Assembly (NCBI GenBank): GCA_965113315.1
Contig: OZ220363.1
Source of the DNA: Podarcis vaucheri
Lineage: Eukaryota
Reading direction: 5' to 3' (one strand)
Length of the DNA: 64,000 nucleotides
Made by a program: the position numbers and the translations under genes
The notes under the pieces: generated by a model
Database searches by the model: none
The model's input: only the letters and a program-made list of their open reading frames with translations
Told to the model about the DNA's origin: nothing
Shown here: positions 182-63,401 of the stretch, piece after piece
Layout: every line of letters starts with the position of its first letter
How positions within the stretch are numbered: the stretch's first letter is position 1

Positions 182-957
182 GTTTTGCGGATGATGGTTG
201 GCGTAAACATCTCGGATGAACAGTTGGGCAGCATTGCTGACAGAACAATCCAGGAGGCTGATCAAGATGGTGACAGTGCAATCTCCTTTGCAGAGTTTGT
301 TAAGGTCAGGAAACAATGTTTAATATGGCAAACCTAATTAAGTGCTAGGATTGCCGAATCAGATGTGCAATCAAATGAATAGGAGGCTTAGGTGCATAAT
401 TTCTTCAGTTATTTTGCTATTTCCCATATCTGAACATAAATTGGCAGAGGTGTGCTCTTCAGCTTCATAACAATTGCAATTTATCTTATTTGCTTAAATG
501 ATTCTTGTTAGACACATTAGTTTTTCTAAATATTTTTAGCGTGTGACAACTTTGCATGCTGTTCCAAGGCATGGTCTGTGGGTAAATGATACAGGAGCCT
601 TTCTTGAAATTAAGCTGATTTGGTTTGGTCAGTGCTTTGATTAGCCCAGGGATAATCTTGAATTCCATAAATGCAATTAAATACACTCCAAATGCAAGTG
701 TTGCTAAGTACAGCTTTCATTTTCCATAAAATATATTACTGATGACCTCTAGGTCAAGATCTACAAAAAATAGTTCTGTAGCACAAGAGGATATGCAGTA
801 GGAAAGCTGACTAGAATGGCTTCCTAAGACAAGACTAAAGTCTAAATGTTGAGATAGAATTCGATTCCTGTGACAAATGGTTAACAATTCTACTTTTTTG
901 CAGGTTTTGGAGAAGGTGGATGTAGAGCAAAAAATGAGCATTCGATTTCTTCACTGA
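182..957 (+). CDS. CHP1: Calcineurin-like EF-hand protein 1, last two coding exons (182-304, 904-957); 5' part lies outside the window
   Basis: cag|182-304|gtcagg encodes [41 protein letters not shown] (EF-hand [12 protein letters not shown]). cag|904-957 encodes [17 protein letters not shown], the CHP1 C-terminus. Phase-0 junction. Confidence 0.97.
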
Positions 958-2550: not shown

Positions 2551-3689
2551 TGTGAATGAATGGAGGTTTTAAATAACACAAGGTGCCTGTAGAATGCTAC
2601 AGCTGAAAGACTTTATTTTCTCATATACTAATCTAGTTTTTAAGAGATTGGGTGACATCCAGTGCTGTCAACCCACTTGCACAACAGGACTTGTCTTTTT
2701 CGTCCCTGCTCAAAAGAAAGGAAAACGAAACAAAAAACCTGCTCTGCAGGCTCCTGCAACCTTCAAAAGATTTCGGAGAGCAAAGAGAAACCCAGCTGCA
2801 TAAGCAGATGTTTGCTCATGCAACTTTGGATCTCACCTCTTGTTTTCATTACTCAGGTTTTAAATGGCTTTGAATTTTCAACCTGCAGGCATTTAGAATG
2901 TTTTACAAGCAATATATATCAACTGGAATTTCCTGCTTTCTCTTAGGCCAGGAGTGTGTGGTCCTATTGCCCTTATATCTGTGGCTTAGCTATTTATCAG
3001 TTTAATGGTGGGAATAAATAGGAGTTTCCTGCCTTTTACTCAGAATATGTTAAGACAGAACAGATTTTAAAACTTCAGATAAAATTAGAAATAACGGGGA
3101 ATGGAGATGAAATACATGCCAGCTAATGTGTATTCTTAACTCTTGTTGTTAGTCCAGCTGTGCATTTTAACTCATATAAACTTCTCAACTTGATGGGTTT
3201 TGCTTAGGTTTCAGTAGCTGTACAATTCACTGTAGAGTGTAGAAACCTGAAGACTCATTTATTATGTTCCTAACTAAAGGGACTAAAGGTTGATTCTCAT
3301 GTTACGGTAGATGCAAATTCCCATTTGTCTACAAAAAAGAATACATTAAAGCACTGTAAGAAGTCTAATATCAATATGGAGTTACTGCAACTATTCATTT
3401 CCTGGCATGTCTTGTCAGAAAAACAACACTCAAGCCATTGTTATATATGTTAGTATTAATCTATATATTAAAAGTACATAATTGTAAATGTGAAGCTTCC
3501 CTAATATTAATTTCAGTTTGCCTTGATCCCACCTAAAAGACAGAGTAAGTTAATTGAAATGATGGATCCAACTCAAGATTATGATGAACGTTGGTTATCA
3601 CCCATACACAAAATATGAATGCATAACATGACATACCTTTTGGTGTGCTATGTTATCCAAACATAATAAACCTACTAAATTAGTACTGA

Positions 3690-3831
3690 CTCAGTTGGTA
3701 GAGCATGAGACTCTTAATCTCAGGGTTGTGGGTTTGAGCCCCACGTTGGGCAAAAATATTCCTGCATTGTAGGGCTCAGACTAGATGACCCTCGTGGTCC
3801 CTTCCAACTTGACAGTTCTATGATTCTATGA
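3690..3831 (+). mobile_element. tRNA-Lys(CTT)-derived SINE with CR1-like 3' tail
   Basis: 3690-3751 closely matches tRNA-Lys-CTT (ctcagttggtagagcatgagactcttaatctcaggg...ccccacgttgggc) but lacks the 5' acceptor strand. It continues into a CR1-type end (ggtcccttccaac...ttctatgattctatga). Confidence 0.85.
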
Positions 3832-3960
3832 CTAGGAGACAACAGAAAATTGTCCCATATAGCAAACACCTCTTCTGTTATGGTGCAACAACCAGAACAA
3901 CAATCTTAAAACTTGTGCAGGTCTCTAGATAGCTTCCTACAGGATATTCCCCCTAAAGTA

Positions 3961-4631
3961 CAGTTGTGCCTCGCAAGACGAAATTAATTCGTTCCGCAAG
4001 TTTTTTCTTGCGAGTTTTTCATCTTGCGAAGCACGGTTTCCCATAGGAATGCATTGAAAATCAATTAATGCGTTCCTAGGGAAACCGCTTGCCAGGCTGG
4101 CGGTGCGGAGAAGGGCTTTTCTCCCCACCGCAAGCTTTCAGGAGAGGTACGGGAACAGAGGGGAAGGCGCGCAGCGCTTTCCCTCTGTTCCCGGGGCTTG
4201 CGTGGGAGGAGGGTTTTTCCTCCCCACCGCCAACATTCAGAACAGCATTCTGAATGTTGGCGGTGGGAAGGAAAACCCTCCTCCCACCCCAAGTCTTCAG
4301 GAAAGCCATCCGAAGCTGGGCGGTGGGAGGAGGCGTCCCCCCCCGCCCGGCATCGGAGCTTTGTTCCGATGCCGGGCGGCGGGAGGAGGCGTTCCCCCCC
4401 CCCGCCCGGCATCGGAGATTCGTTCCGAAGCCGGGCGGCGGGAGGAGGTCCGAGGACAGTAGGGAAGACGCGCTGCGCTTCCCCGCTGTCCCGGAGATTT
4501 CCCTATGGGCTGTCATCTTGCGAAGCAAGCCCATAGGGAAATTCGTTTTGCGAAGCGCCTCCAAAACGGAAAACCCTTTCGTCTAGCGGGTTTTCCGTCT
4601 TGCGAGGCGTTCGTCTTGCGGGGTACCACTG
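3961..4631. mobile_element. Non-autonomous Tc1/mariner (Tigger/pogo-like) DNA transposon with GC-rich palindromic interior
   Basis: TA|cagttgtgcctcgcaagacgaa ... ttcgtcttgcggggtaccactg|TA: terminal inverted repeats and TA target duplication; no transposase ORF. Confidence 0.85.
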
Positions 4632-5439: not shown

Positions 5440-6760
5440 GATCGCAAAAGATCCCGCTCTACATTCCCCATTCAATTTGGACGCGCTCACTTGAGCAAAT
5501 TAGTGGCAGCGGGCACGAGCATCCTACTGAGCGAGGAGGAGGAGGAGGAGCAGCTGCGGGGGGGAAATGTAACAGAATAAACAAAAGTACAATTTCCAAT
5601 TTGCGCATTCCCGCCACCGCGCACAACCCCTTCCTTCCTTTAGGAGGCGTCCTGAACGACTGAGTACACCGAACGCCTAACACTCGCCTCCCGGTCATCC
5701 CACTTCTTCAACGCGGTAATAGGACTCGCGCGGAGGAAGGCGTATACCACATCGCGGTTGGCCAATCGCCTCTCCGTGTCCAGCCGTTTGGGGGAAGCCT
5801 ACCCAATGGCAACCCAAAGCGGAGAAGTGAGTGACAGGAGAGCAGCCCACTCGGTGGGACCCGCGTTCTGTAGAACGGCCGCTGCGTCGCCCTGCGCCGG
5901 CCTCCCATTGGGCGCTCGAAGTAAGGAGGGGAAGATGGCGGAGTGAGGGGGAAGGAAGGAGAGCGCCGTGGGCTGCGGCCCTGGGGCCTTAACTGAGGTA
6001 AGACATGGCGGGCTCAGGGGCTTCGGTGGGCAAGGTCCGTGGGCACCAGGGCCCGCTGGACCGAAAAAACCAACCTGGAGCCTGGAGCTCACTTGGCGAA
6101 GCCCGTCCGTTGAGCCGGTCGGAACCTGCTCTCTCTCTACGTGCCTGTCCCGGTTCTGTGTCGCTGGAGAGAGACAAGTTCTGGGGTCCGGAGCGTATTC
6201 TTATTACCTCAGTTCTGGCCTTTTACCTCATAAGGGGCCTCCTTCCTCCTCCTCGTCCGGGGTTTGTGAGGGTGGGAGCAGCTCGCTTTTCTCTGCCTCC
6301 AGAGCCGCAAACTTGTAAGCGGGCTACGCCTGGAACAAGGGGGTCGAGAATCGCTGCGTGGCCTCGGTGGCCAAGCCAGGGCCACCCCCTCCTTTCCCCT
6401 TCTCCTACCTCCCCAAAGCTGGCAGGGAGCGACGGCTTGCTGGTGAGGCCCTGCACGGGCGAGGTGCTCCAGGCACCCGACGCTGTGCAGCGGCCAAGGC
6501 TGTGCACCGCCTCTCTAGTTCTCGAGCGGGTGGGGTTGGCGAGGCATTGCTGCGGGTACTTGGGCCTCACTGGACATCCCAGTGGCGAAACCATCTCCTG
6601 CCTTCTTTCCAGTGTTGAGAAGTGGGTTGGGGGTCGGTGCGCATTTTCCAGGGGGGTCCTCTGTAGCTCCTGTGCTTTTCAAGGGAAGGCTGGAGTTCGT
6701 CGTGCCTGCAGCCGACTAGCCCGGCCTCTAGTCAGCGTTACTGCGCAGGGCCGATTATGT
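5440..6760 (+). promoter_or_regulatory. CpG island / promoter of Cyrano (OIP5-AS1)
   Basis: CpG-rich island with no protein-coding exon. CCAAT at 5762-5766 and 5803-5807, ATTGG at 5907-5911, ZNF143/SBS-like motifs at 5459-5470 and 5561-5572, YY1/TISU GAAGATGGCGG at 5931-5941, strong donor gag|GTAAGA at 5998. Confidence 0.8.
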
Positions 6761-8775
6761 GTCCCCTTTTCTTTCTTGAGCTGACAGGGGTGCCAACTTG
6801 AATAAAATATCGTGGGGACCAGGTAAGCCCCACCCCACATAATCGATCACATGACGCATTTCCCACATGCTATTTGAATGGCGATGCTCGTCAACTTTGT
6901 GGGGCCCCGGCCCCCTCAAATATTTTATTGTGGGGTCCGAAGCCCCCAGGAGTTGGCTTCTGTGAGAGCTGTATCTCTTGTTGATTCAGCTCCCATTTTC
7001 CCTTGTCTTGCACTTCACAGCTTTCATGTGCCTGTGTGTATCAGAAATAGAACAAGCCATATGTTTTTGTGGGGATCAGGAAGGCTTTCGCTGTCCTGTT
7101 TCCATACTCTTATAAGTGGACATATTTCTTTCCATTATTGTTTACTTTTTCTGTGAATTTTGCTTTTTAAAAAAGAAAAACAACCCCGGGTCTTATTTGC
7201 TTCTTACAATTCTGTGTTTAATAAGTAACACATACAAGCAAGAATGACAGATCAGCTGTTTTCTTAAAGAAGTCAAGAAATAGGAGCCCATCTGCAATGA
7301 AGAAATAAATTATGACTAGCTTTGGGAAAAAACATTGAAACATACACTATGAACAAGCTGGCAGATCTTATGTAGAATTGCTGGTGAGCTTCAGCAGATG
7401 GCTGGAGTGCATTTTGAATGCATTAATTTGTATGCACTGTATCAATTGCTATATAGACAAAGAGCAGCTGCATCTTATTGAAGCAGATACTGCAGAAATA
7501 TATATTTTTTAATTGCATACTTAGGAGATTCTATTTATACAGCTGCCAAAATGTCTTTGAATGGAAAAGAGACAGATGTGAAGAAATGGAGGTCTAATTC
7601 AAACTGCCCCAAGTAAGGGTCTATCATTTTTGGCGAGCTTTACTGGCAGAGTCAAAAACTGTAGTTGCCAGCCCACTTTTCTATGAGCCAAGCCCCTTTC
7701 AAGCCTTTCCCAAGGGAAGAACTAGTGGAAAGAATGCCAGGTTGCTGTCACTGCTTGAAAATGTCCCAAACCTTCAAGCAACAAATCAAGCACCCTCCCA
7801 AGGGAAGGGCCTGAGGGTAATGTGGTCAAGGCTTGCAAGCCTTTCACACAGTGGTGCACAATGTACTCCACCTGCCTTTCCCAAGAGAAGGGTGGATGGG
7901 GAGAGTAGCCAGTTGGGTGCCACTGTTTGAATGTCCCCCAAGTGCCTTCAGGCCAGTGGCATAGCTAGCCACTTGGGCACCATGCGAGCAGGGCGAGCAG
8001 GGCACAAAGCCAGAATCCCAGCGCCTGAGGTGTTACGTTCTGCTCAGGCGTCCTGCAGGCCCGCGTTGCTCTTTCAAGCAGCGCAGAGCCTGCAGGAAGT
8101 CTGCCCAATGCTTCCCCCTCAGCTGGAGGGTAATTGAGAGGGAGGCAGTGGGCAGAGGCCAGTCCCACAGTGCTTTTTGGGGCGTCATGGTGTCTGCAGG
8201 CGCCCAAGACACCATGGCTCAGGTTCGCTGTGGGCCCAGCACTGCTCGTGGGGCCAGCTCGTGCCAGTTGCATCCTTCTCAGCTGCCCTCCGGCGGCTGT
8301 GGGGGATGCAGCAGCTTGGCACCCTGCAAGCACAGCCCTGGTCCGCACTGTGCTCTGGGGTGCCTGGATTTGGGTGTCACCTTGGGCTCCAGCACTCAAC
8401 ACAAATACACACCCCAGCTTCTGGCAAGGACACTGGGAAATACATGGAAAAGATGAAAGCACTAAAAACTGTTATTTTGGCAACCCAAAAACCTGGGTGT
8501 TAGTGATATAGACATTTCCCCTGGAAAAAATTAATTCCAGCTTTGAAACTGCCTTATTTGATAGATAATTGCTAATTCATTTTATAAAGCAAAGCAATGC
8601 ATTTTTATGGCCTTTCTGACACCAATGGGACTAAAATTCTAAAACTGCTGATCTCTTCCTAAGTCTATCTCCATCTTCTTGTCATCTTTGCTGGCATGAC
8701 ACAGACACCATTTTGCAGAGCTGGTGGTTGCTGTGTTGAGATTGGGCCTTGATCCAAGGCAATTGGGATATTACG

Positions 8776-8793
8776 ATATATACATATATACAT

Positions 8794-8831
<38 letters not shown>
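8776..8831. repeat. (AT)n / ATAC microsatellite
   Basis: Direct reading. Confidence 0.95.
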
Positions 8832-8834
<3 letters not shown>

Positions 8835-8920
8835 GGTTTTGGTATCTTCGGGTGTCTTCCCGTGTAAGAGTAGGGGTGTCTGGGCGACGTTTCGACGAGG
8901 TCTCACTCGTCATCTTTAGA
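8832..8920 (-). mobile_element. Penelope-like element terminal fragment with a truncated minimal hammerhead ribozyme
   Basis: Minus strand reads ctAAAGA-t-GACGAG-tgagac-CTCGTC-GAAA-CGTC-gccc: helix II, GAAA, palindromic ACGU helix III and a GUC cleavage triplet. It runs into an (AT)n tract. Confidence 0.7.
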
Positions 8921-9150
8921 GCCAATGAGATATCAGCATATGCACAAAACCCTCCACCTTTATCACTTGAGCAGTGATGAAAGCCACCACCAATATTAAT
9001 TGCCCATCCTCTCTCAATGGCCAGTTTCCCTGCCATTATTGTTCCTCCAGTTTGAGTTCTCAGGGGCCTCAGCACCTTTCTCTGAACAAGGAAATTGGGC
9101 AGAAAAAGAACAGGTGGGATTTCTGTAATTGTCGCCACAACAAAGGACCA
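8914..9150 (-). pseudogene. HDAC11: Processed (intronless) HDAC11 fragment, 79 codons
   Basis: Encodes WSFVVATITEIPPVLFLPNFLVQRKVLRPLRTQTGGTIMAGKLAIERGWAINIGGGFHHCSSDKGGGFCAYADISLALK, the class IV HDAC core including the GGGFHH motif. No introns, N-terminus or C-terminus. Confidence 0.92.
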
Positions 9151-9256
9151 CTGAATGAACTTGAGTTGAAAGACTGGGAGAAACTTGGTGGCTCGGAAAC
9201 CCTGTGGTTGCTTCAATTGCTCCCAAGGTTTTTGTTTTGCTTATATATATGTATGT

Positions 9257-12500: not shown

Positions 12501-15500
12501 GTATGATTTTTAAAAGCTCTCAATCTTTTCTTACCCAGGGGAAAACATTCTTGTGGTTGCAGTCAAAGAATCAGGAGTCAGAAAATTACAGTAGTCTTAT
12601 GCAACAGTAAGTAAATATGGAAAGGCGGTGTTAAGCTGAATTGACAGAAATTATTTCAGGTCCTTGGATAGAAATCTATAAATGTATAAAGTCGGATAAA
12701 AGTATCTGGGTGTTTTCCACTACCCACTTGAAAGCTTTTTTCCAGCGGAGGAGAAGTGGAGTCTTGGATATGTTTACACTGCCCTGCTCGGTTACCTAAG
12801 TGGGCTCAGCAGCGTCTCTCCAAATTCACTTCCTGCCAGCTGGACTGCAGGTTGACAGTTATCACTCTCTCTCACTAGATGAACGCATGAGAGAATGGCA
12901 ACCCAGATTTTCCTTTTATTTTTTCTTCCATCAGTCTGCCTTTCTGTGCTCCCCCCTTTCTCCATCTTAGCAGGATGAGTCTGCCAACCCTCTCTGGAGT
13001 CATCCGACAAGGGGGGAAGGAAGCTGGGTCTCCCATTTCCCCTCATGACATGAAACCAACTCATAGTCTAAGTGTGCTGTATTGAAATGATGAAACACTC
13101 ACCAACTGCTCACAGTTTCTGTTTATTCTCTGAGGTTTTCTTCCTCTGGCAATCTTTTTATTCCATTGCAATATCTGAATTAATTAGCAGTTATCCCTGA
13201 AATAGGTTTATTTCATACATCTTGAATGATATACCAGGTAGACTTCTAGCATAATAATAACTTCTAGCACTGCTCATAATGTATTTAGCATTGGCCACAG
13301 CAATCAAGATCTGTTCTTGGTGTGTGAAACCTGAGGGGCCCCAGAATAAGAACTGCTTGGAATACTATGGGGGGGGGGCGGTCACAGGCACTGTAATTCA
13401 CCTGTAAAACAATTCCTCCACATCTTTAAAAGTTCCAAGGTTCCCATAAAATGTATATGTGAAGTCAGTTTCAACTTAATTTAGAGTGAAATTACTTTCT
13501 CTTTTAATTAGTTAATTTGTGTGTGTATGTTTCCAGGTCCTTTCCTGTCGACCCAACACAGGCTGCTAAAGGAGCTTTGACTGCTTCTGGTGAAGAAAAC
13601 TCCTTCCTTTATCTCCATGAGGGAAAATGAAGAAGCACTGCTTATTTTCTCCTCCACTCCTTAACATGAATTGGAGATGTAAAGCCTGTATTATAGAAAA
13701 AAATACTACTGTCCTTGCAGAGCAACTGAAATTAATGGCTGACATTTCACTGAAACATGCAAACTTTTTGTTCAGAGTTTTTGCACTCTATAAATGATTT
13801 TGCATATAGATAGAGGCATAACCCTAATTTGATTGGCATTTCCCCTTTCAAACTACCTTGGTAAAATAACTGCCTACTCTCAACATAGCATTTAGAGAAG
13901 CGAGCAAATTGATATATCCTTGAAACTTGTTACACAAACCTTTAAAGAAAATATTGTGCAGAAATAAAAGGATATACAGGTGTACTTAAAATGAGGAATA
14001 ACTTCTTAAAAAGGAAAAAAAACAGCTTGCGAAATTGCCCTGTTGGAATTTTTCTCCTTTTAAAAGTAGCCAATTTATAGGTGTCCATCTTGATGCCATT
14101 ATGCGAAGCAGTTGAAGCACAGTAGCATTTAGTAATTTTGTTCACTGTTTTGAGTAGACTATTAAAAAACAAAACTTGCATATATAAATTTACATAATTG
14201 CTGGAAAGGAGAGGTGATCCTATGAGTTGCTGCTTTTCTAGCAAGATCCTTCCCAAGGGGTTGAAATCTTGAAACCACCCCAGGAGCAATGGGTTTTACA
14301 TGGTATCCTCAGTCTTCCTAGGGAATTCAGCAACAAAAGGAATAATACCTTTCTCCAAGCTTTTATCCAAAGGCACCAACTGATAGTGTAAAATATATGT
14401 GAAATTTCCCACCAGTTGGATGAACAAAGACAACACATGCTCAGAAAGGGCTTCTTCACTAATTTTGTGGGTCACTCAAAGTTAAGGTGGAAATTCTGTT
14501 TCTAACATGTTTACAAAAGATGCTTTGTCTCAATTGCACATGATTCATATAGGACATTTTCTTTAGCATGGAATAATAGCTGATTTATTAGCCACACCTT
14601 GCAAGGGTAGATTGATTCCTGGTTTTAGAAAAGTCTCCCCCGCTTCCTTATGCTGAAGCCCTCAGCACTGCACCTTCAGTCTTACTGAAAATGTGAGTTT
14701 AAAATCTGCCAATGGCTTCAAAATATTTTCAATCTGGGTAAAAAAAATGGGAGTGCATGTTATAATGGTCAGTCTTGGTTATCAACATTTTCAGTGCTAC
14801 TTGATGTCTGGTTTGATAGTTTTGAAAGGAACATCCCAAGCTAAATACTGGTATTTGCTCATCACTTAATCTTATGTTCCTTTTATATAATAAAAGATTC
14901 ACATAAATACTTAGGAAAGCTTATTCAGATGCTTTCCTTAATTCAAATCAGGTTTTTTTTAAATGGGATGTTTAATTGAAGATTATCAAACAGGTAAATA
15001 TTTATAACTACTGAACATAATCATATTTATGACTTGGGTCAGCTTGCTGTGGGGAAATTGTCATGGTTGTCATTTAGATTGGCTTTGAAGTATACTTAAA
15101 TCCTAATTCAAATAGAAATCCAGAAATAAAAGTAGCTGGATTTCCTTCTAGGTTCTTCTGAACAGGAATTCCTGTTTAATTTATTGGGATTTTAGATATA
15201 GGGTTAGGCTTCTTAGTTAAACATTCTCTCATTCTGGAACTGAAAATTCAGAAGACATCAAGTGTAGTGATGATTTGCTTTTATGTCGGTAGACTTTATG
15301 TTGTCTTCCCTACGTACTTCTCTCAGATTTAATTTGTAAAAGAATATGCTGGCACAGAGTGAAAATGTTTAGTTTCCCTAAATTGTCAGGATAGATATAA
15401 GAGAAAGTGGCCATATCAGTTGCACAAAATTCCAGCAAAGAACAACTCCCCCATCCCCTTTCCCTCTAGATCCCCTGACTACATGAGGACTCAGTTTAAA

Positions 15501-15751
15501 AACTTGGAGAAACGAGTGCTGTACATGGCCCAAGAAACCCGTTTGTAGTACTTTTCCTGTAGCATCTTAAAAGTACTGTGTCAAGGCAATACTGCCTTAA
15601 TCTTTTTATTTTACATTTTGATCTGCATCTGTTTATGTTGGCAGGAAATCTTTCCCTTATGAAAAACAAATACCGGGCACGTGCAATAGTATAATATATA
15701 CATATAAATATATTTTAATACTTGTGGACAAAATGTTACAAGTTGTTTGAG

Positions 15752-15777
15752 AACAACAAAATCACCAATGTCTTCCA
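15752..15777 (+). promoter_or_regulatory. Extensively paired miR-7 site (TDMD trigger) of Cyrano
   Basis: The reverse complement of miR-7-5p (UGGAAGACUAGUGAUUUUGUUGUU) is AACAACAAAATCAC-TA-GTCTTCCA. The sequence reads AACAACAAAATCAC-CAAT-GTCTTCCA: 8mer seed, 14-nt 3' pairing and a central loop. Confidence 0.95.
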
Positions 15778-18700
15778 TTTTGAGATGTGTATAGTTCCAT
15801 AAGCATTAGTGCTTTGTAGCAAAACTGTAGTGCCATGTTAGGATCAGTGCATGAGCCTAGTAGTACTTTTTTTACAATTTCAGAGTGACAAATTAACAAG
15901 GCTGATGGTGTAATTCATAAGAAACTGACAAGATTATGGTTATGGGCTAAGGATGCAGTGTCCTTTCTAGGCAATGATAGCATATATTGGTGAATAAAAT
16001 CAGTAGCATGAGGAGTGCATGGATCTTGAATCTGTAAGCAGGTAGAAGTGCACTTCAAGGAAACTACAGTTGAAACAGTCCTTAACAAATCCTTTTTTGA
16101 GCAAATAATATTTTGCTGCAATGGGAAAATTCACTGATCTCTTGGACTAAGAAGTTGCACAGATTTAAGTGTGCATAAAGCTAATCTTTGCCACAACATG
16201 TTCTCATAAAATGTCCCTCATATATGACTGTTCTCCATTCAGAAGAGCCTATAAACTCTTACTCAGTTACCCACTAGTTGCATATTTGCTCATAAGTATC
16301 CTTATGTTAGAGCAGCACATCATCTATCAAGTTGAAAAAATGACTAAATTACAAATAATAACACTGCTACTACTATTCAAGATTGGTAGTATTCATTTTT
16401 GAAAGCAAATGATTCTCATTTTCCTACTTCCATAGAAAGCACCTGAAGGAGTTTGCTGTTTTAAAATTTTTTAAATCATTGCAGTACAACTATTTGGGTC
16501 ACTAAGATGTCTCCCTGCTTATATTATCAATTTGCTTTTAGTTCAAATAAGTGAGATCAGCAATTCAGGCACCTGATTTTTCTGTGCAGATCCTGTAGTC
16601 TGGACTGCTGTGATTCTGTTTTTAGAAAACAACTACTTGTAGCTTAAAGAGGATACTGCATCTTTTTCTTGGTCTTGTCTGTAAATGGCTACCTTGGCGA
16701 GGAAAAAAATATTTCTGGTTTTGGTTTACCATTGGCTAAAAATTCATAGGAAACATTTAATTAACCACAAAACAAGAGATCTATGTTTAAAGGTCTCTGC
16801 CTATTCTCCCTTGAAATTTGGGAAGGTGGGTTGTTTACAAATGAGCAGTGAGGACCTGAGCTCAGCCAAGGTTCTGTTGGAAAGAAATGTATCTGTCCCA
16901 TTGAATGAAATAGTTTTTAGTGCTTGGGAGAATCAATTGATGGAAAAATACCTCTGAAACTGGAATGCAAAATAGCACAGTATGTAGGGGGAAAGAATCC
17001 CTGATGCAAATAAAGCCATAAGATGACTTAATCAATAGAACTTTAGTAGCAATAACTGTTTGCATGTAATAGGAACTACTTGCATTAGCAAGTATTGTAT
17101 AATAGAATATATGGTACTAACCAAATAGGTTTGTGGTGCTCTGTGTTGCAGGGAGTTGCCTGACATGATGAGTTTCTCTTTAAAATGTTAGGAAATTCCT
17201 CAAAGGAAGTTGGCACTTGAATGCTTTATTGAGGAGCCTGTTTAAAACTCCTGCATAGCTCCCCCCCCCATTTGATGCAACTAGGGCAGAAACTTGTTGT
17301 GGTCATGGGCTAAAGATGCAGTGTGGATGAGAAAGTGGATGAACCCCTGTCCTCCTTGTCAATAGATAGCATGTAGTTGAACTTCTGGTGTGAAAGGGAA
17401 CTCTTCAGAGACTGTGAACAGGGCCAGGTTCAACCTAAACATGCAATTTAGATTTGATTGTGGAAACTTGTTGCCATTACCTAAAGCTGGTTAGATGTGT
17501 CAAATTTTTGAGGAATGTTGGCAAGGTACAAAGCATCCTAGCACCTAGCAAGTGTTGTGTCTCCTGAAAATGTTATTTTTCTCTTTAAAAAATTTTTTAA
17601 AAACTTGTACGCCTGTTACGTGGTTTCACTCTTAATTATAAAAGCTACTTTTGAGTTTGGAAGCTTCTATTCTAGATGGGTATGCCTGGCAATCTTACCC
17701 TCACCACTCTATAGAGTGCAGTTCATACCTCTTTAAAATGCAACTTGCACTAACCTAGTATGCATGTAAGACCATGTAAACTGTAAGCCTAATATGTAAC
17801 TGCCTTAAACAGGATTCCGCTGAAGTAGAACAGATTCATCTACAAGGTTGGGATGTATACTTGAAGGCTTTACCTTTATTGTTTTCCTTAATTGCAAGGA
17901 GTTATATCCCAGCTGGTGTGTTTCTGCCAATAGAAGGCTTTTGAATAGGGATTAAGGCTATTTTGGGTAGCTCCCCTTCCCTCAACAGCTGCCCATACTG
18001 TTCAAAGGGCCCACCAATTCTCCAGGTCAGATTTGAGTGGGAAGGAGGAATCACTGAAGAGTGCCTCAACCCTTTTTCCACTGATGGCTCCACTGTACTA
18101 AAGAGCCTTCCATAAGCAGAATATGGCCAGAGGGTAGCCAGTATCTACCATCAGTCTGATTAATACAGCCACGTGTTCAAGTGGATGGAAGAAGCCCATA
18201 TTTTAAAAGTAGATATATATTCTGTACAGAACGACCCCTATATATTCATTCTGTAATATGAGCTTTACTAATGGTTTCCAAAATAATGTTTGAAATCTGA
18301 ATTGAGGAGACTGTCCTTTATATGTGAAAAAACAGACAACAAAAACCTGTGACTATTTTGTTCACATCACAAAATATACAAGGCACTTTTTACTGTTTTC
18401 AAACAAACATGATTCTAGGGCTAAGGAAATTTGCACTTTGTTAACCATTCTGAGCAAACTGGCAGAATCCGAAAGGCGTATCTCGGCTATGCCACCAGTA
18501 GGACTTGCTTTGCTCTAAATTTATTTTGAGTTGCTGGTTTGCAGATACTTTTCAATTTGCAAAACTGGTGCTTGACTGACATAGTGCTGCTGCTACCCAA
18601 TTTAATAAATAATGAGCTTTTTAGCTTGGTATCTGGATAAGTGTGTGAGCTTCATACATGCAGGATTTGCTGTTGTGGTGCTTAGTCAGAAACATTTAGG

Positions 18701-21700
18701 ATGTGGTTAACTGTTTGAAGATGCTTGGCTATCTTGCATAACCTCATAATGGAGAGCTTTGCTGCCTAGATCTATAGAAATGAGGGGTTCTGTTGCTCTC
18801 CAGAGCAGCCTTTGCCAGCCTGGTGCCCTCCAGATGCTTTGTGCTGTAGGTCCCATCAACCCCAGCAGCACATCCAAAACAACTGGAGGACACCTGTGAG
18901 AGGCGGCTCCAACAAATTGCACTTAAGCAGTTTGCACCTCAGTAGCTGTGGTATTTAAACTCCTGAAGGTTTAGCACTGAAATTTGTTTCCATAAGCAGT
19001 TAATGAGGGGAAAGATCTTTCTATGAAGTGGCTCTTCATGGCACATAAGCAGCACTTGGGGTATGCATGGTGTATACACCACCACCTCGCTTCCATTTAT
19101 TCTCCTAACAGCCTTTATTCTATCAGTGGAGAACAGGATTTCATTCTAAGTATATTAGTGCCATTCTTTATGAATGGTTGCAGGGGGCTCTTCTTTAATA
19201 GTCTGTCTCTATTCTACATGTGCACTAGTTTTTATGATAAAATCCCCCTTACTTGACTTCTCCCTTTTAGACCTTTTATTCTTGCTTTGCACTTTGAAGA
19301 ACAGTAATTATTGAGCAGCACAATACATGGGTGCCAATAAATGTATTTTCCAAACAGGCTTCTGGGATATAGATGGTAAGTTTGCAAGTGGTAGCGTTGG
19401 ATCTTTGCAACAGGATTTGGAGGCCTAAGCTGAACTGAATTTTTGTACCATGCTTTATTAAGTACTTGAAGATTGAGGGTGGGGATGGAAGAAGGACAAG
19501 GAGATTATGCCCTCACCCTGTACACAGAAAGGCAATGAGTTCTCCCTGCCCTGAAATGTAGAGGAATGGTCAGCTAAGTGGTGCTCCCCAAAGACTGCAA
19601 GAATAAAAGCTTAATAGGGTCTCTGCTGAACAAAGAACTCATTTGTATGAAAGGACTCTTATGACAGGAATGTGGAAAACAAAATACTAGAGAATGAGAA
19701 TATGTCATGTGATGGGGCAGGGGAGAATGCTCCAAGGTGAAGATTTCCTACATAACTAGATGAGAAGGAAGCAGGTTTAGAGCTGGAGATTGGTTCTATC
19801 TGAAGGGGGGGGCAGGATGAAAGCATTCGAGTTTGATCACTTGCTAGTTGGTTTTAGATGGAATTGTCAACTTTCCCTAATTACAGCACAATGAACATTC
19901 CACAGAGTTTAGCATCTAAATAGTTGCAACTTATCTGTCCTCTGCCATCTTTGACAAACCCTTGGAAAGCAGATGAGGTTGTGAAACTCAAGTATGGAAA
20001 ACATACATGGAAAATTGACAATGGCACAAGCACATAGGCTCACAAACCAAGTCTTTTATGGAGGTAGTATTCTAATTATGCATGATTAAGATGTCTAGTG
20101 TTATAGTTATTACCAGTAAATTGATATATGCATTTATACATAATGAAGCAATAGGAACTAATATACCAATAGCTTGAACTTACTGCTTTGATTCTCAGAT
20201 TTTGATTTTAGAGAACATTCTGTCTCTTTAAAGGAGGCAGAATGTACAAATAAGAGAAGCATGACACCAAAACTGTGTATTTGAAAGAAGAATCAGCAGA
20301 ATGAGCCCTTTTGACCTCTTACCAGGTTCATTGTGTTCCCTTGAGCCTACATAATATGAGCATGGTTGGTGGTAAGATGGGTTTCTTGGCTGCTGCAATT
20401 GTACAAATAAAAAAGGTGCAGAGTTTCAGAGTACAGAGAAGGCACTAGATGAACGCCAAATAGGGCAATAGCAAAATGTTGTATGTAGTAGGAATTTTCA
20501 GGTAACAAGAAGGAAGGAACCTGGATCACAACCTGTTGGCTGCAAATAAATGAGAATTTAGGTGCATGAAATCATTAAGCAGTCCTTACTCTTCAGGTAT
20601 TGAGTTTAAATGACAGGTTCTCCTCGCCAGGTATCTCTCACCCTGTTAGGCAGCTATACCAAGATGAACTGGTTTCAGACCAGCATTAATATACCTTACA
20701 ATAACTAATCTGAAAATGGCAAAGTTTTGCTTTAGACACAAAGCAAGTTAAAGCTTGCTAAGTAGGAGTGGAGCTTGCTAACTAGATTCAAGAGAGTAAA
20801 TGGCACCCCCATAAAAATTATTGGTTTAGTTACAAAAAAAGTAAAAAGTGGGTGCATTTAATGGTAGAATATATATGCCGAATACATATTAAATATTAAG
20901 TAGAGGATGGTAGAAGCATAGCCCTTGTATCTAAACCTGGACTAGAAAATTATTTTCCTAATATGAAGGTGCTGCTTAAAATAAACACTGAGTTTAAAGT
21001 TCCTTAACTAGATTGTGGCTATACTAGTTTCTGCAGAGCAAGTTACAAACACTTCTTCATATCAAAGTTTGCTTTCTCATAGATCTGAAAAAGGATTTGT
21101 TATGGCAAATCTGCATTTTATGTTAGTGGTTATTTTCCCAATCATTTATTTTAAGCTTGTTATAGAGGCCATATTTTTTGCATTGCCAGTCTCAGTGATT
21201 AGTAGCTGCCAAATAGATGTATGAATATTGGAGACGTGAGTGAAGACTTGTAATGACATCAGTTTGACTTCCCCTCTGATTTCATGTTAACATGAAAAGA
21301 CTCCATAGTATTGTATCATTGAATTGTTTTTCCCAAACTCTGTCCCTCTTGTAGGTTGTGATTTAGGGCTCTGCTAATTAATTTCTTCTTTCAGAGCAAA
21401 GAAAAGATTGTCTTTGCAAATGCATAGGATAACTGATCATAATAAAAGGATTGTGAAAGCTAGAGTCTGGGAAAATGTACAGAAACATTGTATAAATTTT
21501 AGAAGTAGGCTGACATTTTGTTAACTCACTTGAACAAGCAGAACAGACAAGGAAGGTATATGCCACTGCAAACTATTTACTCCCATTGCACAATTATGTA
21601 ACAAATACCACAAATCTACCCCTGTATATATCTGAAGATTTCCAAAAGGCAGCTTGCTTTTATATCTATGCATCTTTTGGGGAGGGAAAGAGGGTGTTAA

Positions 21701-22061
21701 AATTATTCTTTTGACACTGTAAACAATAATTGTTCAAAACTGAACCTGGAAACTCTGCACCTGTATACAATTTTTTAGCAATAAAGCAGCATGGGCTGAG
21801 AATGCACTTAAAATGCCATTGTGTCATTTCTTCTAGGACGAACTCTTGAAACGATAGAAATGTAGGTTCACATATTTCAGTTTGCCTTCATTGTGGAGCA
21901 GGAGAAAGATGTTTAATCATTGCAAGCTTATATGATAGCGGTGAAACCCCAGCAGCTTTTTAGCACATCTGAGCCACTTCATACTCTCATGTATTTCTCA
22001 ACAATTATGTGATTGGTTGCCATGTGTTTTGCAGTGCCTCTTCTCCCTCCTCTTCCCAATA

Positions 22062-23032: not shown

Positions 23033-26000
23033 TTAGTTGTTCAACTTCTTCCTTGTTCCCCCAGATGCTTGGCCATGTAGTCTTGCTTTGTAGATCTGCT
23101 TATCAGACATCAACTTCTGCTGGTTTCTTTCTTCGAGTTTCTCAATCAACCGTTCTATCCGTATGTGCGCTAAAACAAGGTTCTCCTTTAACTACAAAAA
23201 ATAATAATCACCAAGCTTAGATAAAATGAAGTGATGCAGAAAACCAATTATATCAGCCAAATCTTTTGTCAGTGAAAACAAAAAATTGTCCAATATTTTA
23301 AGTCCAGCGATACACCTTGTAGCTATGCATTTGAGAGGCATCTCTGTTAAAGGTGTGGGAGAAAATCAACATTGCACCAAGGCTATTCTGTCAGGTCAAG
23401 CATTTTGGCTTGCTAGATGAATCAATCCCCTTTACCTGTTTCGGGTGTTCTCTCAACCATTGACCCAATTATAGAGGGCACAGGGGAAGGAGGGGGGAAC
23501 CCCAGTGCACAAGCAGAAGTCCTTGTTCAGGGTATCTCTCATGTATCTTGGGAAAGTGACTAGGGCAGCTGAGCGCTCCTTCATGATAACTCTCCAAACT
23601 TGATTGGCATGAACCCAGCATGCTGACAACCGATCCTTCAAGAATCGTGTAAGACAGTTTGTCATGTGCAAATTTGGTTCCACTTGCTCCTCACCTTTTA
23701 GCCCACCTCACTGGCCTCAGATGAAAGCTGGTACTGTCAGCTGTGTAGTTTGACAATCATACTTGGGAAGATTTAAGCTCAGATAGGTCCCCTGTGGCCT
23801 ACCATAGCTGTTTGCTAGCACGGTCAAGGGTTGCTCATCCCTGATTTAAACAGTTCCACTTGATCTAAAGAAACAATGAAGCTGTACAGGGCCTGTTCCA
23901 AACCTCTCCAACTGCACAGAATCCACTGCAGCAGCTATTTCATTTGGCATTTGGGTAATGGCAGAAGCCTCAGAATATGTGAGAGGAGTCCACAATGCAG
24001 TTCCTACCAGAACTGGGGCAACATTAATGCAGGAAGAAGCCACGCTGTGGACTCCTCTTTTATAGCACAGGAATTCTCCTGTTTCCTCGAGTGGCACAGG
24101 AAAGTCAAGCTGGAACAGCTCCTATTTGTCTCAGATAAAGTGAGGACACACTCTCTGAATATCTTATTAGTAGAGTATACTATATTTGCCTTTGGTATTC
24201 GGCTGCCGAATGTGTTCATGTGCTCTTTGGTTTAAATGAGCAAAGGACTGCATTAAGCTCAATTTTATGGACTGCTTGTTTTGAAAAGCTTGTTTATGAG
24301 AACAGGATGCTGTAGTTAGTTTCCAGAAAATATTTATAATCTAAACTGAAAAATGTTAATATTTTACCAGTTTAAAGTATAAATATTTTCTGGAAACTAA
24401 CTACAGCATCCTATTTTCATACAACCATGTGCTTGAAAGAACAACCGGTGTTAGCTAAGTGTGCCTGGGAGCTATTTTTTCTATTTCACAGACTTGGAGG
24501 GTTGCCTTTGGTTTGCCAAGCCTCAAAACAGTTTGTGCCCATTATTATTACTAGAAAAGAGCCTGTGTTTCTATGTTCCATAAATGTCTGAAAGACTGCT
24601 CTGACTACTCCTTTTAAACCTCAGTTTAGTATATTGTGCAACAGTCTATAAGAGAAACCCAGGTTCAAATTCTGCCCTGTCAAAGACTATCAGCACAATT
24701 CTATCTATGTCTGCTCATAAGTAAGTCATACTGAATCGGTGATTTTAGTGGGCCTTATACTCCCAGGTGAATGGGGTTAGGATAGCAGCCTAAAAAAGTT
24801 CACAAGACGCTCTCTGTTGCAAGGGTTGCAAAGCTGATAAGAGCACTTAACATGTTTTGTAATGGTACATATTTTTGTACATTAGTCACATTTTTATCTG
24901 CCCAGTTCCCCTGTGAGAAGGGGAAAACAGTAGTTAACAAACACAAAATCAGAAGAACACTTACTTTCTGTACTTGTTCCTTTAGGCTCACAGGAGGACA
25001 GGTCATCATTGAGGCTTCAATTGTGGTTTTAGTTTTTAACAAGTAACTGAAAAACAGGTTAAAAGACAATACATTTTGAAATTAGCTGATCAGTCATAGG
25101 AATGTATGAATAAAGGAGAAGATAAACATAACTTATATTGCAATTTTTCAGAATATTGCGTTCACTTTTTTCAACATTTTATGTCTACTCCAGCAAGAGA
25201 AATCTAAATATTCAAAAGTGAAGATTATTAATAATAACAACCATGTAATAGTATTTTGCCAGCATCCTGATTTCAATGATTATATCCTAACGTGATATAA
25301 TCTCCTGAAATTAATAGGTTTCCACAATCTCATACTGCAGTACATTTCAGATTCTTAACAATGTATTTTGAAGGACCTAATTATTCAATATACAACACTT
25401 ATTTTATTTTCAAGAAAATAACTTCTCGCCTCTCCTGTCCCTTCCTCAAGTAGGCTAAACTTTTGTGGTCATAGATCACTTCTATTTTATAGCCAAGTTT
25501 TAAGCCCTTTCACACAGCATATTCAAAGGTCAATGCCTTATCATGAAGTAATACTTAAGCAGCCAATCAACAAGTAAATGTCATCCACTGAAAAGCACCG
25601 TCTTGAGCTGTGACAATACGGTTTCTCATTCACAAGTCAAGACACAAGACTGCATGATCATTGTTTAGCATAATAGCAAAGCTATTCAAATCCCAGGTCA
25701 GCTGTGAAGCTCACTGGGTGACTTTGGACCTGTACTTCCCACTAACCATATAATACTGGGCTGTTGGGAATCTAAACTGGAAGGGAAGCAGTCCCCTGAG
25801 CTCTTTGTAGAGGTGATGGGATAAAAAAGGGGGGGAACAATTAAGTGAAATCACCCTTAAGATCCAGAAAATATGAATGGTACTTTCCAGTGGCTAATTG
25901 AATAAATCTCCTAAACTTTTATTCCCACTGGAAAATTAGTTTTAGATCAGCTCTCATAACAGCATGGTGTTACTATTGGAATAGTTATTTTCAGTTGTAT

Positions 26001-28987
26001 TCTGCTTCAGTTGTACGCCCAAACATTAGCTACATGTTGTGCTGCTGTAACTACCACAGCATAGTGTCTACAAATGATGCCATCAGCCAGTATCTCTTTT
26101 GGAAAAGCCTTTTTTAATCCTTTGCATGCCTTTTTATGAAACCTTCATATATAAACTTATACAGGATGTCTTGTATGTGTCAGTTTGTTACCCTTCGTTT
26201 TACTGGAGTTTATCTGTATGACTTAACCATCCAATCAGTTCAACATGCATCTGGACACTAACCATATGATGTTGTCCTTCAAAAGGCAAAAGAAGCCTCG
26301 CAGGTGAGCCAGAGGTTTTGAACAATAGAGTCTGAAACCTATTCCCGCTTTACATTCTCGACAGTACAACATGTTGTAGGTGCTGGGGAGAAAAGACCAT
26401 GTGTGAAGTCAGCATTCCATAATCTGCTTTATGACCAAACTAGGGGCTTCAGACACCATAAGCAACATTTTTGGAATTTGCCCTAGAAAATCCAGAATTA
26501 TTCAGTTATAAAAACCAAATTTAGAGTATGTATCTTTCCATTAGTAGATAGCGGGCATAGGCAAACTCGGGCCTCCAGATGTTTTGGGACTACAATTCCC
26601 ATCATCCCTGACCACTGGTCCTGCTAGCTAGGGATCATGGGAGTTGTAGGCCAAAAACATCTGGAGGGCCGAGTTTGCCTAGCTTGGTATATAGCTTCCA
26701 AATTTACAGGGGAGAGGGGTGTTGCAAAAACCTGTATGAACATATTCCTCGTGATAAGAATGCAGCATGGTTTCCTTACTACAGAATATGCATCCTTAAA
26801 CAAAATATGCTGCATTCATCCAAAATATTTACAAAGAAGTCCTATGGGGGCAGCGGTGGGAGAATCCAAGGTGGAGGAAAAACCAAATTGAAAGCTCTGC
26901 AGAGCTGGTAGGGCAGAAAATTGGGGTGGGGAACAAGGAGGATGTTTCTGAATTTCTTCTTTCACTGGTTCCCATAACATCTTATTGTTTTCACAGTCAG
27001 AAAGCTAGAGAAGGCAGAAACCCTTCTCTGCCCAGATCTTTCTCTATCTATACTCTTTTAGGACCCCAGGATACCCGCCCCAGGAAACAAAGGAAAGAAG
27101 AGATGCAAAAAGAGCCATTTCTCGGAGACAAAGGATGCTCATTGGGAATGAAATAAACATTTACTTAAGCCAGGCATTTTATTTTGAAAAAGTACTAAAA
27201 AAAACAAGTCTGGCAAATAAAGTATTATTTATTTCATTAGCCACCTTCCCCAAGTCACATGCAAATAAAACAAAAAGGTGGCATAGGGTTCCAAGATATG
27301 CTTGCTCTTCTAAGCATCTGATGTAGTACATTTTAATTAAAAAAACTACAACTCACCATCCTTTGAGGTCTCCCTCAATACAGACCATCAAGTTATCTTC
27401 CACTACAACATCATTTGTAACCTCTGAAAAGAGAAGCAGAGCTTTTGCAGATTGAATAAAGCTAAGCATTCATCAATGAATTACATTCAAACACTTTATT
27501 TCATTTAATATTTATTCAGGGACCTGTTAAGACACCTGTAAATTATTCAGATAGATCTCATAGAAACAATTTATTTTCATGCTTGAAAAATAAGAGATGG
27601 CTAGTGCTAGAATCACTGCAACATGCACTTTAGGTTTAATATATATTATTACAGGCATATTTAAATTGGTACTGAAGCATTTTACACAAGCTAAGATCTA
27701 AATTTAAAATGTCACTTTCAGAAATCATAGTAGAAAAGGGACTCTCATTGAAGATTGCAAAAGTGGATTCCTGTTATGATAGAAATTAATGCTGTACTTT
27801 GGAATTCACACCATTCTTTATTTAGATCATGGCTTGTTGTTGATTTATTTAACATCAGTTAAGATTAATATTAACATTGGTTAAGATGGCGTGCTCTGGT
27901 CCATGGGGTCACAAAGAATCGGACACGACTAAACAACAACATTAACCAGTTTATTGGTTTGGAAATGAAAGCTTCTGAACTCCTTGTGGCTATGCCACAT
28001 GAGGGGAAGAGGCGGGAATCACCCCAACAGAAGGCTCTCCACAGCTTATTCACATCACACTAAATTGGTTTAGTGTGTGAATGTGGCCTTCTCAGCCTCA
28101 GAATGGTTGTGGGAGTAAGGGCAAATAGAGTGTCATATATGGCCTGCGGTCTACATTCATGCTTGGCTAACCCTGTAGGGTCTCTCTCTCACACACACTC
28201 TATATATATATATATATCTACTGCTGCCAATACTGGCAAGGTCTCATGGAACTACATCATTTTTGTTTTTTAAATGTATTTTTATTGCTTTTATTTCTTA
28301 TGCATTACATTTCAGTTTGAATTACAAGAAAATACAACATAAGAAATGAAAGCAATCAAAATCAAACAGTACCTGGCAGAAGACATCACAGAAATCATGA
28401 GCCACGACCAACATTTTTCAAGTGGCGGGGGCGGGGTGGGTTTGACCATCGGCTCAAATCTTTTAAATTCCATGTTTTGAGCTTCGCACGACCCCTACAC
28501 GAATGTAACAGGTGTAATGATAACCCGTGTACATTGCCACGTGCGACAACAATCCTGCGTGTATTTAGTTGAACATCTGTGCAGCCTGATTGATGAAGAG
28601 CCCGGTGTAGCTCGAAAGTTCGCGCCTTTTCTTTTTCTAAAGAAAAAAAAGCGCCTTTCCTTTTTCGCTCCGAGGCTGCCAACCCAACACTCAAAAGAGT
28701 GCGACCCACTCACTGAAGCAAACGAGAAGGCGGAGCTTCTCCTCCTGGGCGCAGAGATGAAGCGAGTCGCCCAGCACCGAACGGCAACCGCGGCACTGGT
28801 AAAGCACGCAGTCCTCCAGCCTGAGACTCCGGGAGCCCGGAAGCCGCTCCCCGGGGTTCTCCGGAGGCTTTGCGCTTTGCTGACCATGGCGGCAGCTCTT
28901 CGTCCCGGGTTCCGCCCGATCCACCCTGATCACGCCTCCCAGTCGGGGCTCTTGGAAGAAAAGCTCCAGCTGCCGCCGCACGGCCAT
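23033..28987 (-). CDS. OIP5: Opa-interacting protein 5 / Mis18-beta, 5 exons, ~233 aa
   Basis: Exons 28987-28714, 27423-27357, 26382-26263, 25046-24965, 23191-23033; all GT-AG with consistent phases, 702 nt in total. Yippee/Mis18 CxxC pairs (CRGC, CREC), LRGFFCL, YLLKTKTTIEAS and a C-terminal coiled coil LKENLVLAHIRIE. Candidate AATAAA on the minus strand at 22432-22427. Confidence 0.95.
26552..26686. mobile_element. Palindromic hAT-type MITE
   Basis: ggcataggcaaactcgg...ccgagtttgcctagcttg with imperfect 8-bp TSD gtagatag/gtatatag; same family as 62000-62378. Confidence 0.8.
27887..27940 (+). mobile_element. BovB/RTE LINE 3' tail fragment
   Basis: ggcgtgctctggtccatggggtcacaaagaatcggacacgactaaacaacaac is the typical BovB 3' end with a (CAA)n tail. 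Confidence 0.75.
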
Positions 28988-29447
28988 GTTGCTTCCCGCC
29001 AACTTTTCAAACCTAGTCCCCACCCCCTGGGGCGCCTATTGGGGCAGTCCCTCATGACGCTAGCAGGCTTTCCCCCCTCCGATTGGGTGCCGCTCTTACT
29101 CCTCAAGCTTTCCCCAACCAATCGCGTTTTCAACCCAAAGGGCGCTTTTGTTTTACCTCGGAGCGTGTGGAGAGCCGGAGAAGCCTTCGCGCCTTTTCGA
29201 AACAAGGGAACGAAACGGTGGTGGGGTTGGCTTGTTGTTGTTTTAATTATTTATTTATTTATCTATCCGGGGTTCCTATTGGCTAGGAGCCTCCTTCGAG
29301 CACCACCCACTTTCGCTTGCGGCTCGACCAATGAGACGGCGCGAGAGGTGATTTCGAAGGCGGCGCGGCGGGGAGGAAAGACGGCGAGCGCTGAGCGGGC
29401 GGGTTTGAAGTGCGGCGGTTGGAACGGTCGGTTGGATAGAGGCGAGC
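28988..29447. promoter_or_regulatory. Bidirectional cell-cycle promoter shared by OIP5 and NUSAP1
   Basis: The two ATGs are 461 bp apart. CHR TTTGAA faces each gene (29011-29006 minus; 29404-29409 plus). E2F-like TTGGCGGGAA at 29002-28993, five CCAAT boxes (29038, 29082, 29118, 29278, 29328), MYB-like CGGTTG at 29416 and 29429. Confidence 0.85.

Positions 29448-52913: not shown

Positions 52914-63401
<10,488 letters not shown>

What the first reader, a model, noticed from the sequence alone, without database searches (positions are those of the whole stretch)
15752..15777. Cyrano miR-7 destruction site: a hidden lncRNA gene in the ORF-less gap between CHP1 and OIP5
Seen: AACAACAAAATCAC-CAAT-GTCTTCCA pairs miR-7 nt 1-8 and nt 11-24, with an internal loop (4 target nt against 2 miRNA nt) over the slicing position. 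Established: this architecture in Cyrano/OIP5-AS1 triggers ZSWIM8-dependent target-directed degradation of miR-7, which regulates Cdr1as and other miR-7 targets in mammalian brain. Inference: the lizard keeps an intact Cyrano-miR-7 circuit. The system is known in mammals and fish but is invisible to ORF-based annotation and, to my knowledge, uncharacterised in lizards.
Basis: partly seen in the sequence, partly recalled or inferred. Interest (0 to 1): 0.85.

Follow-up and report, generated by a model that had tools for sequence, protein, structure and literature searches.

The report
Lizard Cyrano lncRNA miR-7 destruction site
The 26-base site is real and marks the lizard copy of Cyrano, a non-coding RNA gene already known across vertebrates that destroys the microRNA miR-7, so this is a sound but expected orthologue, not a discovery.

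Summary
Observation confirmed. At 15752-15777 (+) a unique 26-nt site pairs with miR-7 nucleotides 1-8 and 11-24 across a loop of 4 target nucleotides against 2 miRNA nucleotides. No shuffle gave a match.

Interpretation largely supported. The site lies in the position of Cyrano/OIP5-AS1: downstream of CHP1 (+), tail-to-tail with a Mis18-family gene (OIP5, -), then NUSAP1 (+) and NDUFAF1 (-). All nine ordered Cyrano motifs published for 18 other vertebrates occur here in the same order. They run from a TISU start motif in a CpG island (5935) to the poly(A) signal (21778). The four motif conditions tested beside the site never co-occurred in 2000 shuffles. The 4-nt loop equals the wild-type length needed for ZSWIM8 recognition.

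The only expression hint is that 14 small assemblies, guessed to be RNA, from related lizards hold 61-71% of the terminal-exon words.

The Cdr1as part of the reading does not transfer, because Cdr1as is reported only in placental mammals.

Cyrano is already described as vertebrate-wide, so novelty and interest are low.

The parts
15752..15777 (+). miR-7 target-directed-degradation site: 14 nt pairing to miRNA nt 11-24, a 4-nt target loop, and 8 nt pairing to nt 1-8
   Evidence: architecture as described for Cyrano in 10.1101/279687 and PMC13083262
15681..15688 (+). miR-25/92 8-mer seed match (LncLOOM element 2). The base before it is C, where the published 9-mer has U
   Evidence: PMC7798263; present in 3 of 2000 flank shuffles
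15788..15794 (+). Pumilio recognition element UGUAUAG (LncLOOM element 6)
   Evidence: present in 4 of 2000 shuffles
15848..15854 (+). Rbfox motif UGCAUGA, 60 nt downstream of the Pumilio element (published spacing about 55 nt)
   Evidence: present in 44 of 2000 shuffles
21666..21672 (+). miR-153 seed match CUAUGCA, 112 nt upstream of the poly(A) signal (published spacing about 100 nt)
21778..21785 (+). GCAAUAAA: Cyrano poly(A) signal and miR-137 site. The predicted 3' end is near 21800-21810, followed by a U/GU-rich stretch
   Evidence: the pairing with the miR-153 match occurred in 7 of 2000 shuffles
5500..6500 (+). CpG island, the predicted Cyrano promoter (GC 0.61-0.64, CpG observed/expected 0.63-0.89)
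5925..5997 (+). Predicted exon 1. It holds the TISU/YY1-like motif AAGATGGCGG (ATGGCG at 5935), a 3-codon ORF and the splice donor GAG|GTAAGA at 5997|5998. The 5' end is not determined
   Evidence: LncLOOM element 1
13500..21805 (+). Predicted long terminal exon. Its start is not determined; candidate acceptors lie at 12539, 12935, 12971 and 13622. None of the five ORFs of 71-115 aa tested has a Pfam match
182..957 (+). Upstream neighbour CHP1: last two coding exons (about 182-304 and 904-957, with the stop codon)
   Evidence: E 4e-22, 47 of 48 residues identical to human CHP1 residues 135-182
23033..29035 (-). Downstream neighbour OIP5 (Mis18-beta), convergent with Cyrano. Last coding exon 23033-23191, Yippee-Mis18 exon within 26238-26408, first exon within 28694-29035
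   Evidence: PF03226, E 2.4e-4 and 1.7e-6, profile positions 2-30 and 54-93

Best explanation
This is the lizard orthologue of the lncRNA Cyrano (OIP5-AS1), and 15752-15777 is its miR-7 site.

Inferred gene model: transcription starts at a CpG-island promoter near 5.93 kb on the + strand. The RNA is spliced, carries the site in a long terminal exon, and is polyadenylated near 21.8 kb, tail-to-tail with OIP5.

Inferred mechanism, taken from mouse and human work: AGO-loaded miR-7 pairs through its seed and its whole 3' half. The 4-nt/2-nt internal loop blocks slicing and bends the duplex. The miRNA 3' end leaves the PAZ pocket. The ZSWIM8-CUL3 ligase recognises this conformation together with at least 25 nt of flanking RNA and polyubiquitylates AGO. 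miR-7 is then exposed and degraded. The neighbouring miR-25/92, Pumilio, Rbfox, miR-153 and miR-137 motifs probably regulate Cyrano itself.

Shown here: the sequence, the site architecture, the synteny and the motif order. Inferred: transcription, strand, splicing, and any effect on miR-7.
For: Site: it is exact and unique, with 0 matches in 100 shuffles. Pairing covers nt 1-8 and 11-24 with a 4/2 loop. [quoted passage not shown]

Synteny: CHP1 (+), Mis18/OIP5 (-), NUSAP1 (+) with four exons matching PF16006 at E 3e-17 to 3e-8, and NDUFAF1/CIA30 (-).

Motifs: all nine LncLOOM Cyrano elements are present in the published order and with similar spacing. Using only sequence beside the site, the four conditions (three motifs near the site and the 3'-end pair) occurred in 3, 4, 44 and 7 of 2000 shuffles, and never together.

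Gene features: a CpG island with a TISU-like start and a consensus donor, and a poly(A) signal with a downstream U/GU-rich stretch. None of the tested ORFs has a Pfam match.

Expression hint: 14 small assemblies (39-153 M letters, guessed RNA, 4 studies) from two related organisms hold 0.61-0.71 of the words of 13500-21800. Genome-sized runs of the relatives hold 0.69-0.77.
Against: The strand is inferred only from motif orientation.

The exon 2/3 structure is undetermined. The local MFE fold is no more stable than shuffles (z -0.2 to -0.6), so the published cloverleaf is neither confirmed nor refuted. The miR-25/92 9-mer, reported invariant in 18 species, has C for U at its first base, although the 8-mer seed match is intact.

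miR-7 and ZSWIM8 of this genome lie outside the window.
Confidence: 0.85

Rival explanations
1. Cyrano is present and transcribed, but in the lizard the site acts mainly as a high-affinity miR-7 binding or sponge site, or as a site that regulates Cyrano itself, and does not drive ZSWIM8-dependent miR-7 decay.
For: TDMD by Cyrano has been shown experimentally only in mammals. A retargeted Cyrano-type site in 293T cells repressed miRNAs without clearly engaging ZSWIM8. Cyrano levels fall when ZSWIM8 is lost, so the site can also mediate repression of Cyrano.
Against: Every architectural feature shown to matter for ZSWIM8 recognition is kept unchanged: seed pairing, a 4-nt loop, full 3' pairing and long flanks. 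Conservation this strict fits the TDMD geometry better than plain binding.
Confidence: 0.08
2. The site is a conserved DNA relic or a non-RNA element (for example an enhancer), and the locus is not expressed as a + strand lncRNA in this species.
For: No reads could be laid, and no run is on record as RNA.
Against: All nine strand-specific RNA motifs survive in order, from the TISU start to the poly(A) signal, over 16 kb. An unexpressed locus would not keep them. The small assemblies hold nearly as many of the 8.3-kb stretch's words as genome-sized ones do.
Confidence: 0.04
3. The stretch is foreign (human or mammalian) DNA in the assembly, which would explain why the read filter called it human-like.
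Against: The tool itself says the filter 'also trips by chance; no evidence of anything'. Only 42 bases were flagged, which is what a vertebrate-wide core would give. The surrounding 8.3 kb is held by 20 runs of the source organism and three related ones. The flanks carry a repeat also present elsewhere in the window, which earlier notes on this genome class as a lizard hAT transposon.
Confidence: 0.01

Closest known systems
Cyrano / OIP5-AS1 lncRNA of mouse, human and zebrafish (Ulitsky 2011; Kleaveland 2018, preprint 10.1101/279687)
   Same: Position between CHP1 and OIP5, convergent with OIP5. [quoted passage not shown] The same ordered accessory motifs: TISU, miR-25/92, Pumilio, Rbfox, miR-153 and the PAS/miR-137 element. 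An inferred terminal exon of roughly 8 kb, similar to the roughly 8-kb mammalian transcript.
   Different: The species is a squamate, a group absent from the 18-species LncLOOM set. The first base of the 'invariant' miR-25/92 9-mer is C, not U. The short ORF at the TISU start has only 3 codons. With the nearest OIP5 poly(A) signal (22427, - strand), the two genes would not overlap. Transcript and function are untested here.
ZSWIM8-CUL3 TDMD triggers in general (NREP/libra-miR-29b, HSUR1-miR-27a; PMC13083262, PMC10620050)
   Same: Seed pairing, an internal loop and extensive 3' pairing, set within longer flanking RNA.
   Different: This is not a new trigger-miRNA pair. It is the orthologue of the best-studied one.
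Mammalian Cdr1as-miR-7-miR-671-Cyrano network
   Same: It shares the Cyrano-miR-7 arm.
   Different: Cdr1as is reported only in placental mammals, and miR-671 only in marsupials and placentals (PMC13125240). A lizard would have at most the ancestral two-part arm.

Membership tests
Cyrano/OIP5-AS1 orthologue | Lies between CHP1 and OIP5, on the CHP1 strand and convergent with OIP5 | tested here: met
   CHP1 exon at E 4e-22; Yippee-Mis18 exons on the - strand; NUSAP1 and NDUFAF1 beyond. The human gene order is from my own knowledge.
Cyrano/OIP5-AS1 orthologue | One site pairing to all miR-7 nucleotides except 9 and 10 | tested here: met
   definition
Cyrano/OIP5-AS1 orthologue | Nine ordered LncLOOM elements (PMC7798263) | tested here: met
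   All are in order. Element 2 matches 8 of its 9 bases, and those 8 are the seed match.
Cyrano/OIP5-AS1 orthologue | Spliced, polyadenylated, non-coding + strand transcript with the site in the terminal exon | tested here: inconclusive
There are only indirect word shares in runs guessed to be RNA, a donor, a PAS and a CpG island, and no Pfam match in the tested ORFs.
Cyrano/OIP5-AS1 orthologue | Alignment to the 67-nt core and the 300-nt tetrapod block of other species | not tested
   No reference Cyrano sequence was available in the tools. After, the letters of 15740-15781 could not be sent to any search.
Cyrano/OIP5-AS1 orthologue | Cloverleaf of about 100 nt around the site (Jones 2020, PMC7430676) | tested here: inconclusive
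   The local MFE shows a multibranch fold with the site partly paired, but z is only -0.2 to -0.6 against shuffles. It was not compared with the published structure.
ZSWIM8-dependent TDMD trigger | Seed pairing, internal loop and extensive 3' pairing, with the wild-type loop length of 4 | tested here: met
   requirement
ZSWIM8-dependent TDMD trigger | At least 25 nt of flanking RNA on both sides (sequence-independent) | tested here: met
   The site lies kilobases from either predicted transcript end; requirement. This holds only if the region is transcribed.
ZSWIM8-dependent TDMD trigger | Site-dependent and ZSWIM8-dependent loss of the miRNA | not testable with these tools
   This needs small-RNA data or an experiment.
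Cdr1as-centred four-RNA network | Cdr1as circRNA and miR-671 present | not testable with these tools
   Both lie outside the window. The literature places them in placentals and in therians only.

The most novel reading that the evidence does not exclude
A squamate runs the bare ancestral Cyrano-miR-7-ZSWIM8 arm without Cdr1as or miR-671. The lizard could then serve to ask what Cyrano-directed miR-7 decay is for when the mammalian circRNA partner is absent. The C-for-U change in the otherwise invariant miR-25/92 9-mer would be a squamate peculiarity.
Probability: 0.6. Interest if true: 0.25.

Novelty: already known. Interest (0 to 1): 0.15.

Why it matters
It matters little beyond annotation. 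The result confirms that the Cyrano gene and its unusual miR-7 site, with all accessory motifs, are intact in a squamate. That fills a gap between chicken and mammals in the published 18-species set and gives a firm anchor for naming this lncRNA in lizard gene sets. It also corrects the idea that the mammalian Cdr1as circuit can be assumed in lizards.

Tried and rejected
- **Read laying.** It was counted, nothing was laid, and the cap is 1. Later work either used sequence beside them or read them only in local scripts:
  - the flank-only shuffle test used only sequence beside them;
  - the local blastn had them masked;
  - one local script (not a search) read the window file to check pairing and fold.
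- **The look-up of encoding contigs.** I tried an ORF well beside the site.
- **Rfam at gathering thresholds.** It found no lncRNA family, only a tRNA-like hit at 3685-3746.
- **PDB sequence searches.** Searches with OIP5 and NUSAP1 exons gave nothing useful; the PPR and PsbY hits are repeat noise.
- **Papers not held.** Kleaveland 2018 (Cell), Ulitsky 2011 and Hezroni 2015 were unavailable. The Kleaveland preprint was used instead.
- **Steps not attempted.** I made no comparison with human sequence.
- **Readings rejected.** A CHP1 3'UTR extension is unlikely, because a separate CpG island and TISU start lie after the CHP1 poly(A) signals. Contamination is also rejected; see the rival explanations.

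Full report
**Observation**

They occur once in the window. No dinucleotide-preserving shuffle gave a match, even with three mismatches allowed. The 8-mer seed match alone is at chance level, with 2 found against 2.26 expected, so the signal lies in the extended pairing.

Nucleotides 1-8 and 11-24 are all Watson-Crick paired. The loop is four target nucleotides against miRNA nucleotides 9-10. The duplex energy is -28.6 kcal/mol.

**Gene neighbourhood**

- **CHP1 (+).** The ORF piece at 92-334 matches human and rat CHP1 at E 4e-22, with 47 of 48 residues identical to residues 135-182. The last CHP1 coding exon, ending ...KMSIRFLH-stop, is at about 904-957.
- **OIP5 (-).** Two exon-sized pieces (within 28694-29035 and 26238-26408) match Pfam Yippee-Mis18 at profile positions 2-30 and 54-93, with E 2.4e-4 and 1.7e-6. 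A terminal coding exon with a good acceptor lies at 23033-23191.
- **NUSAP1 (+).** It lies head-to-head with that gene. Four exons match PF16006 at E 3e-17 to 3e-8.
- **NDUFAF1 (-).** A CIA30 exon lies on the - strand at 49814-50377.

The order CHP1, gap, OIP5, NUSAP1, NDUFAF1 is the human 15q15 order, which I state from my own knowledge. Between CHP1 and OIP5, none of the longest ORFs has a Pfam match.

**Independent test of identity**

Ross et al. (LncLOOM, PMC7798263) curated Cyrano from 18 vertebrates: eight mammals, chicken, Xenopus, seven fishes and elephant shark. No squamate was included. They found nine short elements in a fixed order. All nine are present here on the + strand, in that order:

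| Element | Position | Note |
|---|---|---|
| ATGGCG (TISU/YY1 start) | 5935 | context AAGATGGCGG |
| miR-25/92 site | 15681 | 8-mer seed match intact; base before it is C, where the published 9-mer has U |
| two miR-7 elements | 15752-15777 | the site itself |
| UGUAUAG (Pumilio) | 15788 | |
| UGCAUGA (Rbfox) | 15848 | 60 nt after the Pumilio element; published about 55 nt |
| CUAUGCA (miR-153) | 21666 | 112 nt before the poly(A) signal; published about 100 nt |
| GCAAUAAA (poly(A) signal, miR-137) | 21778 | |

I then shuffled only the sequence beside the site. The four conditions were met in 3, 4, 44 and 7 of 2000 shuffles, and never together.

Other gene features agree. The TISU motif sits in a CpG island (5500-6500, GC 0.61-0.64, CpG observed/expected 0.63-0.89). 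A consensus donor GAG|GTAAGA follows at 5997|5998. The poly(A) signal is followed by a U/GU-rich stretch.

Identity as the Cyrano orthologue is therefore secure on sequence grounds.

**Mechanism (inferred from other species)**

In mouse, the site directs ZSWIM8-dependent loss of miR-7, by more than 97% in some tissues.

The 2026 structural study (PMC13083262) reports the following:
- The internal loop bends the duplex.
- The wild-type target loop length is four, and changing it reduces ZSWIM8 binding and AGO2 polyubiquitylation.
- About 25 nt of flanking RNA on each side is needed, but its sequence is not.

The lizard site meets each sequence-level requirement. Nothing here tests function.

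**What could not be shown**

- Later work used sequence beside them, except. That was a local script, not a search, and it read the window file for the pairing and fold check.
- **Indirect hint only.** In one search, fourteen small assemblies (39-153 M letters, marked 'RNA? a guess', four studies, two related organisms) hold 0.61-0.71 of the sampled words of 13500-21800. Genome-sized runs of the relatives hold 0.69-0.77, and the presumed source holds 1.00. Such small assemblies holding almost the whole 8.3 kb suggests an abundant transcript. It proves neither RNA origin nor strand.
- **Exon structure.** Internal exon boundaries are unknown. Strong donors lie at 12047 and 12311, and candidate acceptors at 12539, 12935, 12971 and 13622.
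- **Cloverleaf.** The published cloverleaf (PMC7430676) is neither confirmed nor refuted, because the local MFE z-scores are only -0.2 to -0.6.

- **Cdr1as.** It is reported only in placental mammals, and miR-671 only in marsupials and placentals (PMC13125240). The lizard can have at most the Cyrano-miR-7 arm.
- **Novelty.** The papers read here call Cyrano broadly conserved in vertebrates, 'from human to lamprey', with a 300-nt block shared from Xenopus to human. A squamate copy is expected. I found no paper that describes it in a squamate, so it is undescribed but not new in kind.
- **Species.** That the genome is a wall lizard comes from other agents' notes. I did not test it.

**Verdict**

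The function is inferred by orthology, and transcription is unverified for technical reasons. The finding belongs to an already known system, and interest is low.

Noticed in passing
window 3955-4608 and 33303-34038: The GC-rich block just upstream of the Cyrano CpG island shares two arms of about 85-94 bp (85-88% identity, inverted orientation) with the element at 33.3-34.0 kb, which another note calls a Pack-type transposon. It also has internal inverted repeats. It looks like a sibling copy with different inner content, so the high GC at 4.0-4.6 kb is a repeat and not the Cyrano promoter.
   Followed up: partly
window 3685-3746 (+): Rfam tRNA hit (38 bits, model positions 6-65) in the CHP1-Cyrano spacer. 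It is most likely the head of a tRNA-derived SINE and not a tRNA gene.
   Followed up: no
window 8665-9216 (-): An ORF with a histone-deacetylase domain fragment (PF00850, E 4e-9) lies inside the predicted Cyrano intron, on the opposite strand.
   Followed up: no
window 15680-15688 (+): The miR-25/92 9-mer reported as identical in all 18 LncLOOM species has C instead of U at its first base here, while the 8-mer seed match is intact. That base faces miRNA nt 9 (U) and would pair in neither form, so the change is probably neutral.
   Followed up: partly
window 5935-5946 (+): The short ORF that starts at the conserved TISU ATG is only three codons long (Met-Ala-Glu-stop) in this lizard.
   Followed up: no
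window 21145, 22427 (- strand signals): After the OIP5 stop near 23033, the nearest - strand AATAAA is at 22427. That would leave about 600 bp between the 3' ends of OIP5 and Cyrano, with no antisense overlap. A distal signal at 21145 would give about 650 bp of overlap, as in the human 'AS' arrangement.
   Followed up: no
window 28517-29653 (+): A 378-codon ORF with no Pfam match spans the OIP5/NUSAP1 bidirectional CpG-island promoter. It is almost certainly a GC-rich artefact that overlaps the first exons of both genes.
   Followed up: partly
window 53959-53966 (+): The only other miR-7 8-mer seed match in the window lies in the GC-rich island at 52-54 kb, beyond NDUFAF1. The count is at chance level.
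   Followed up: no
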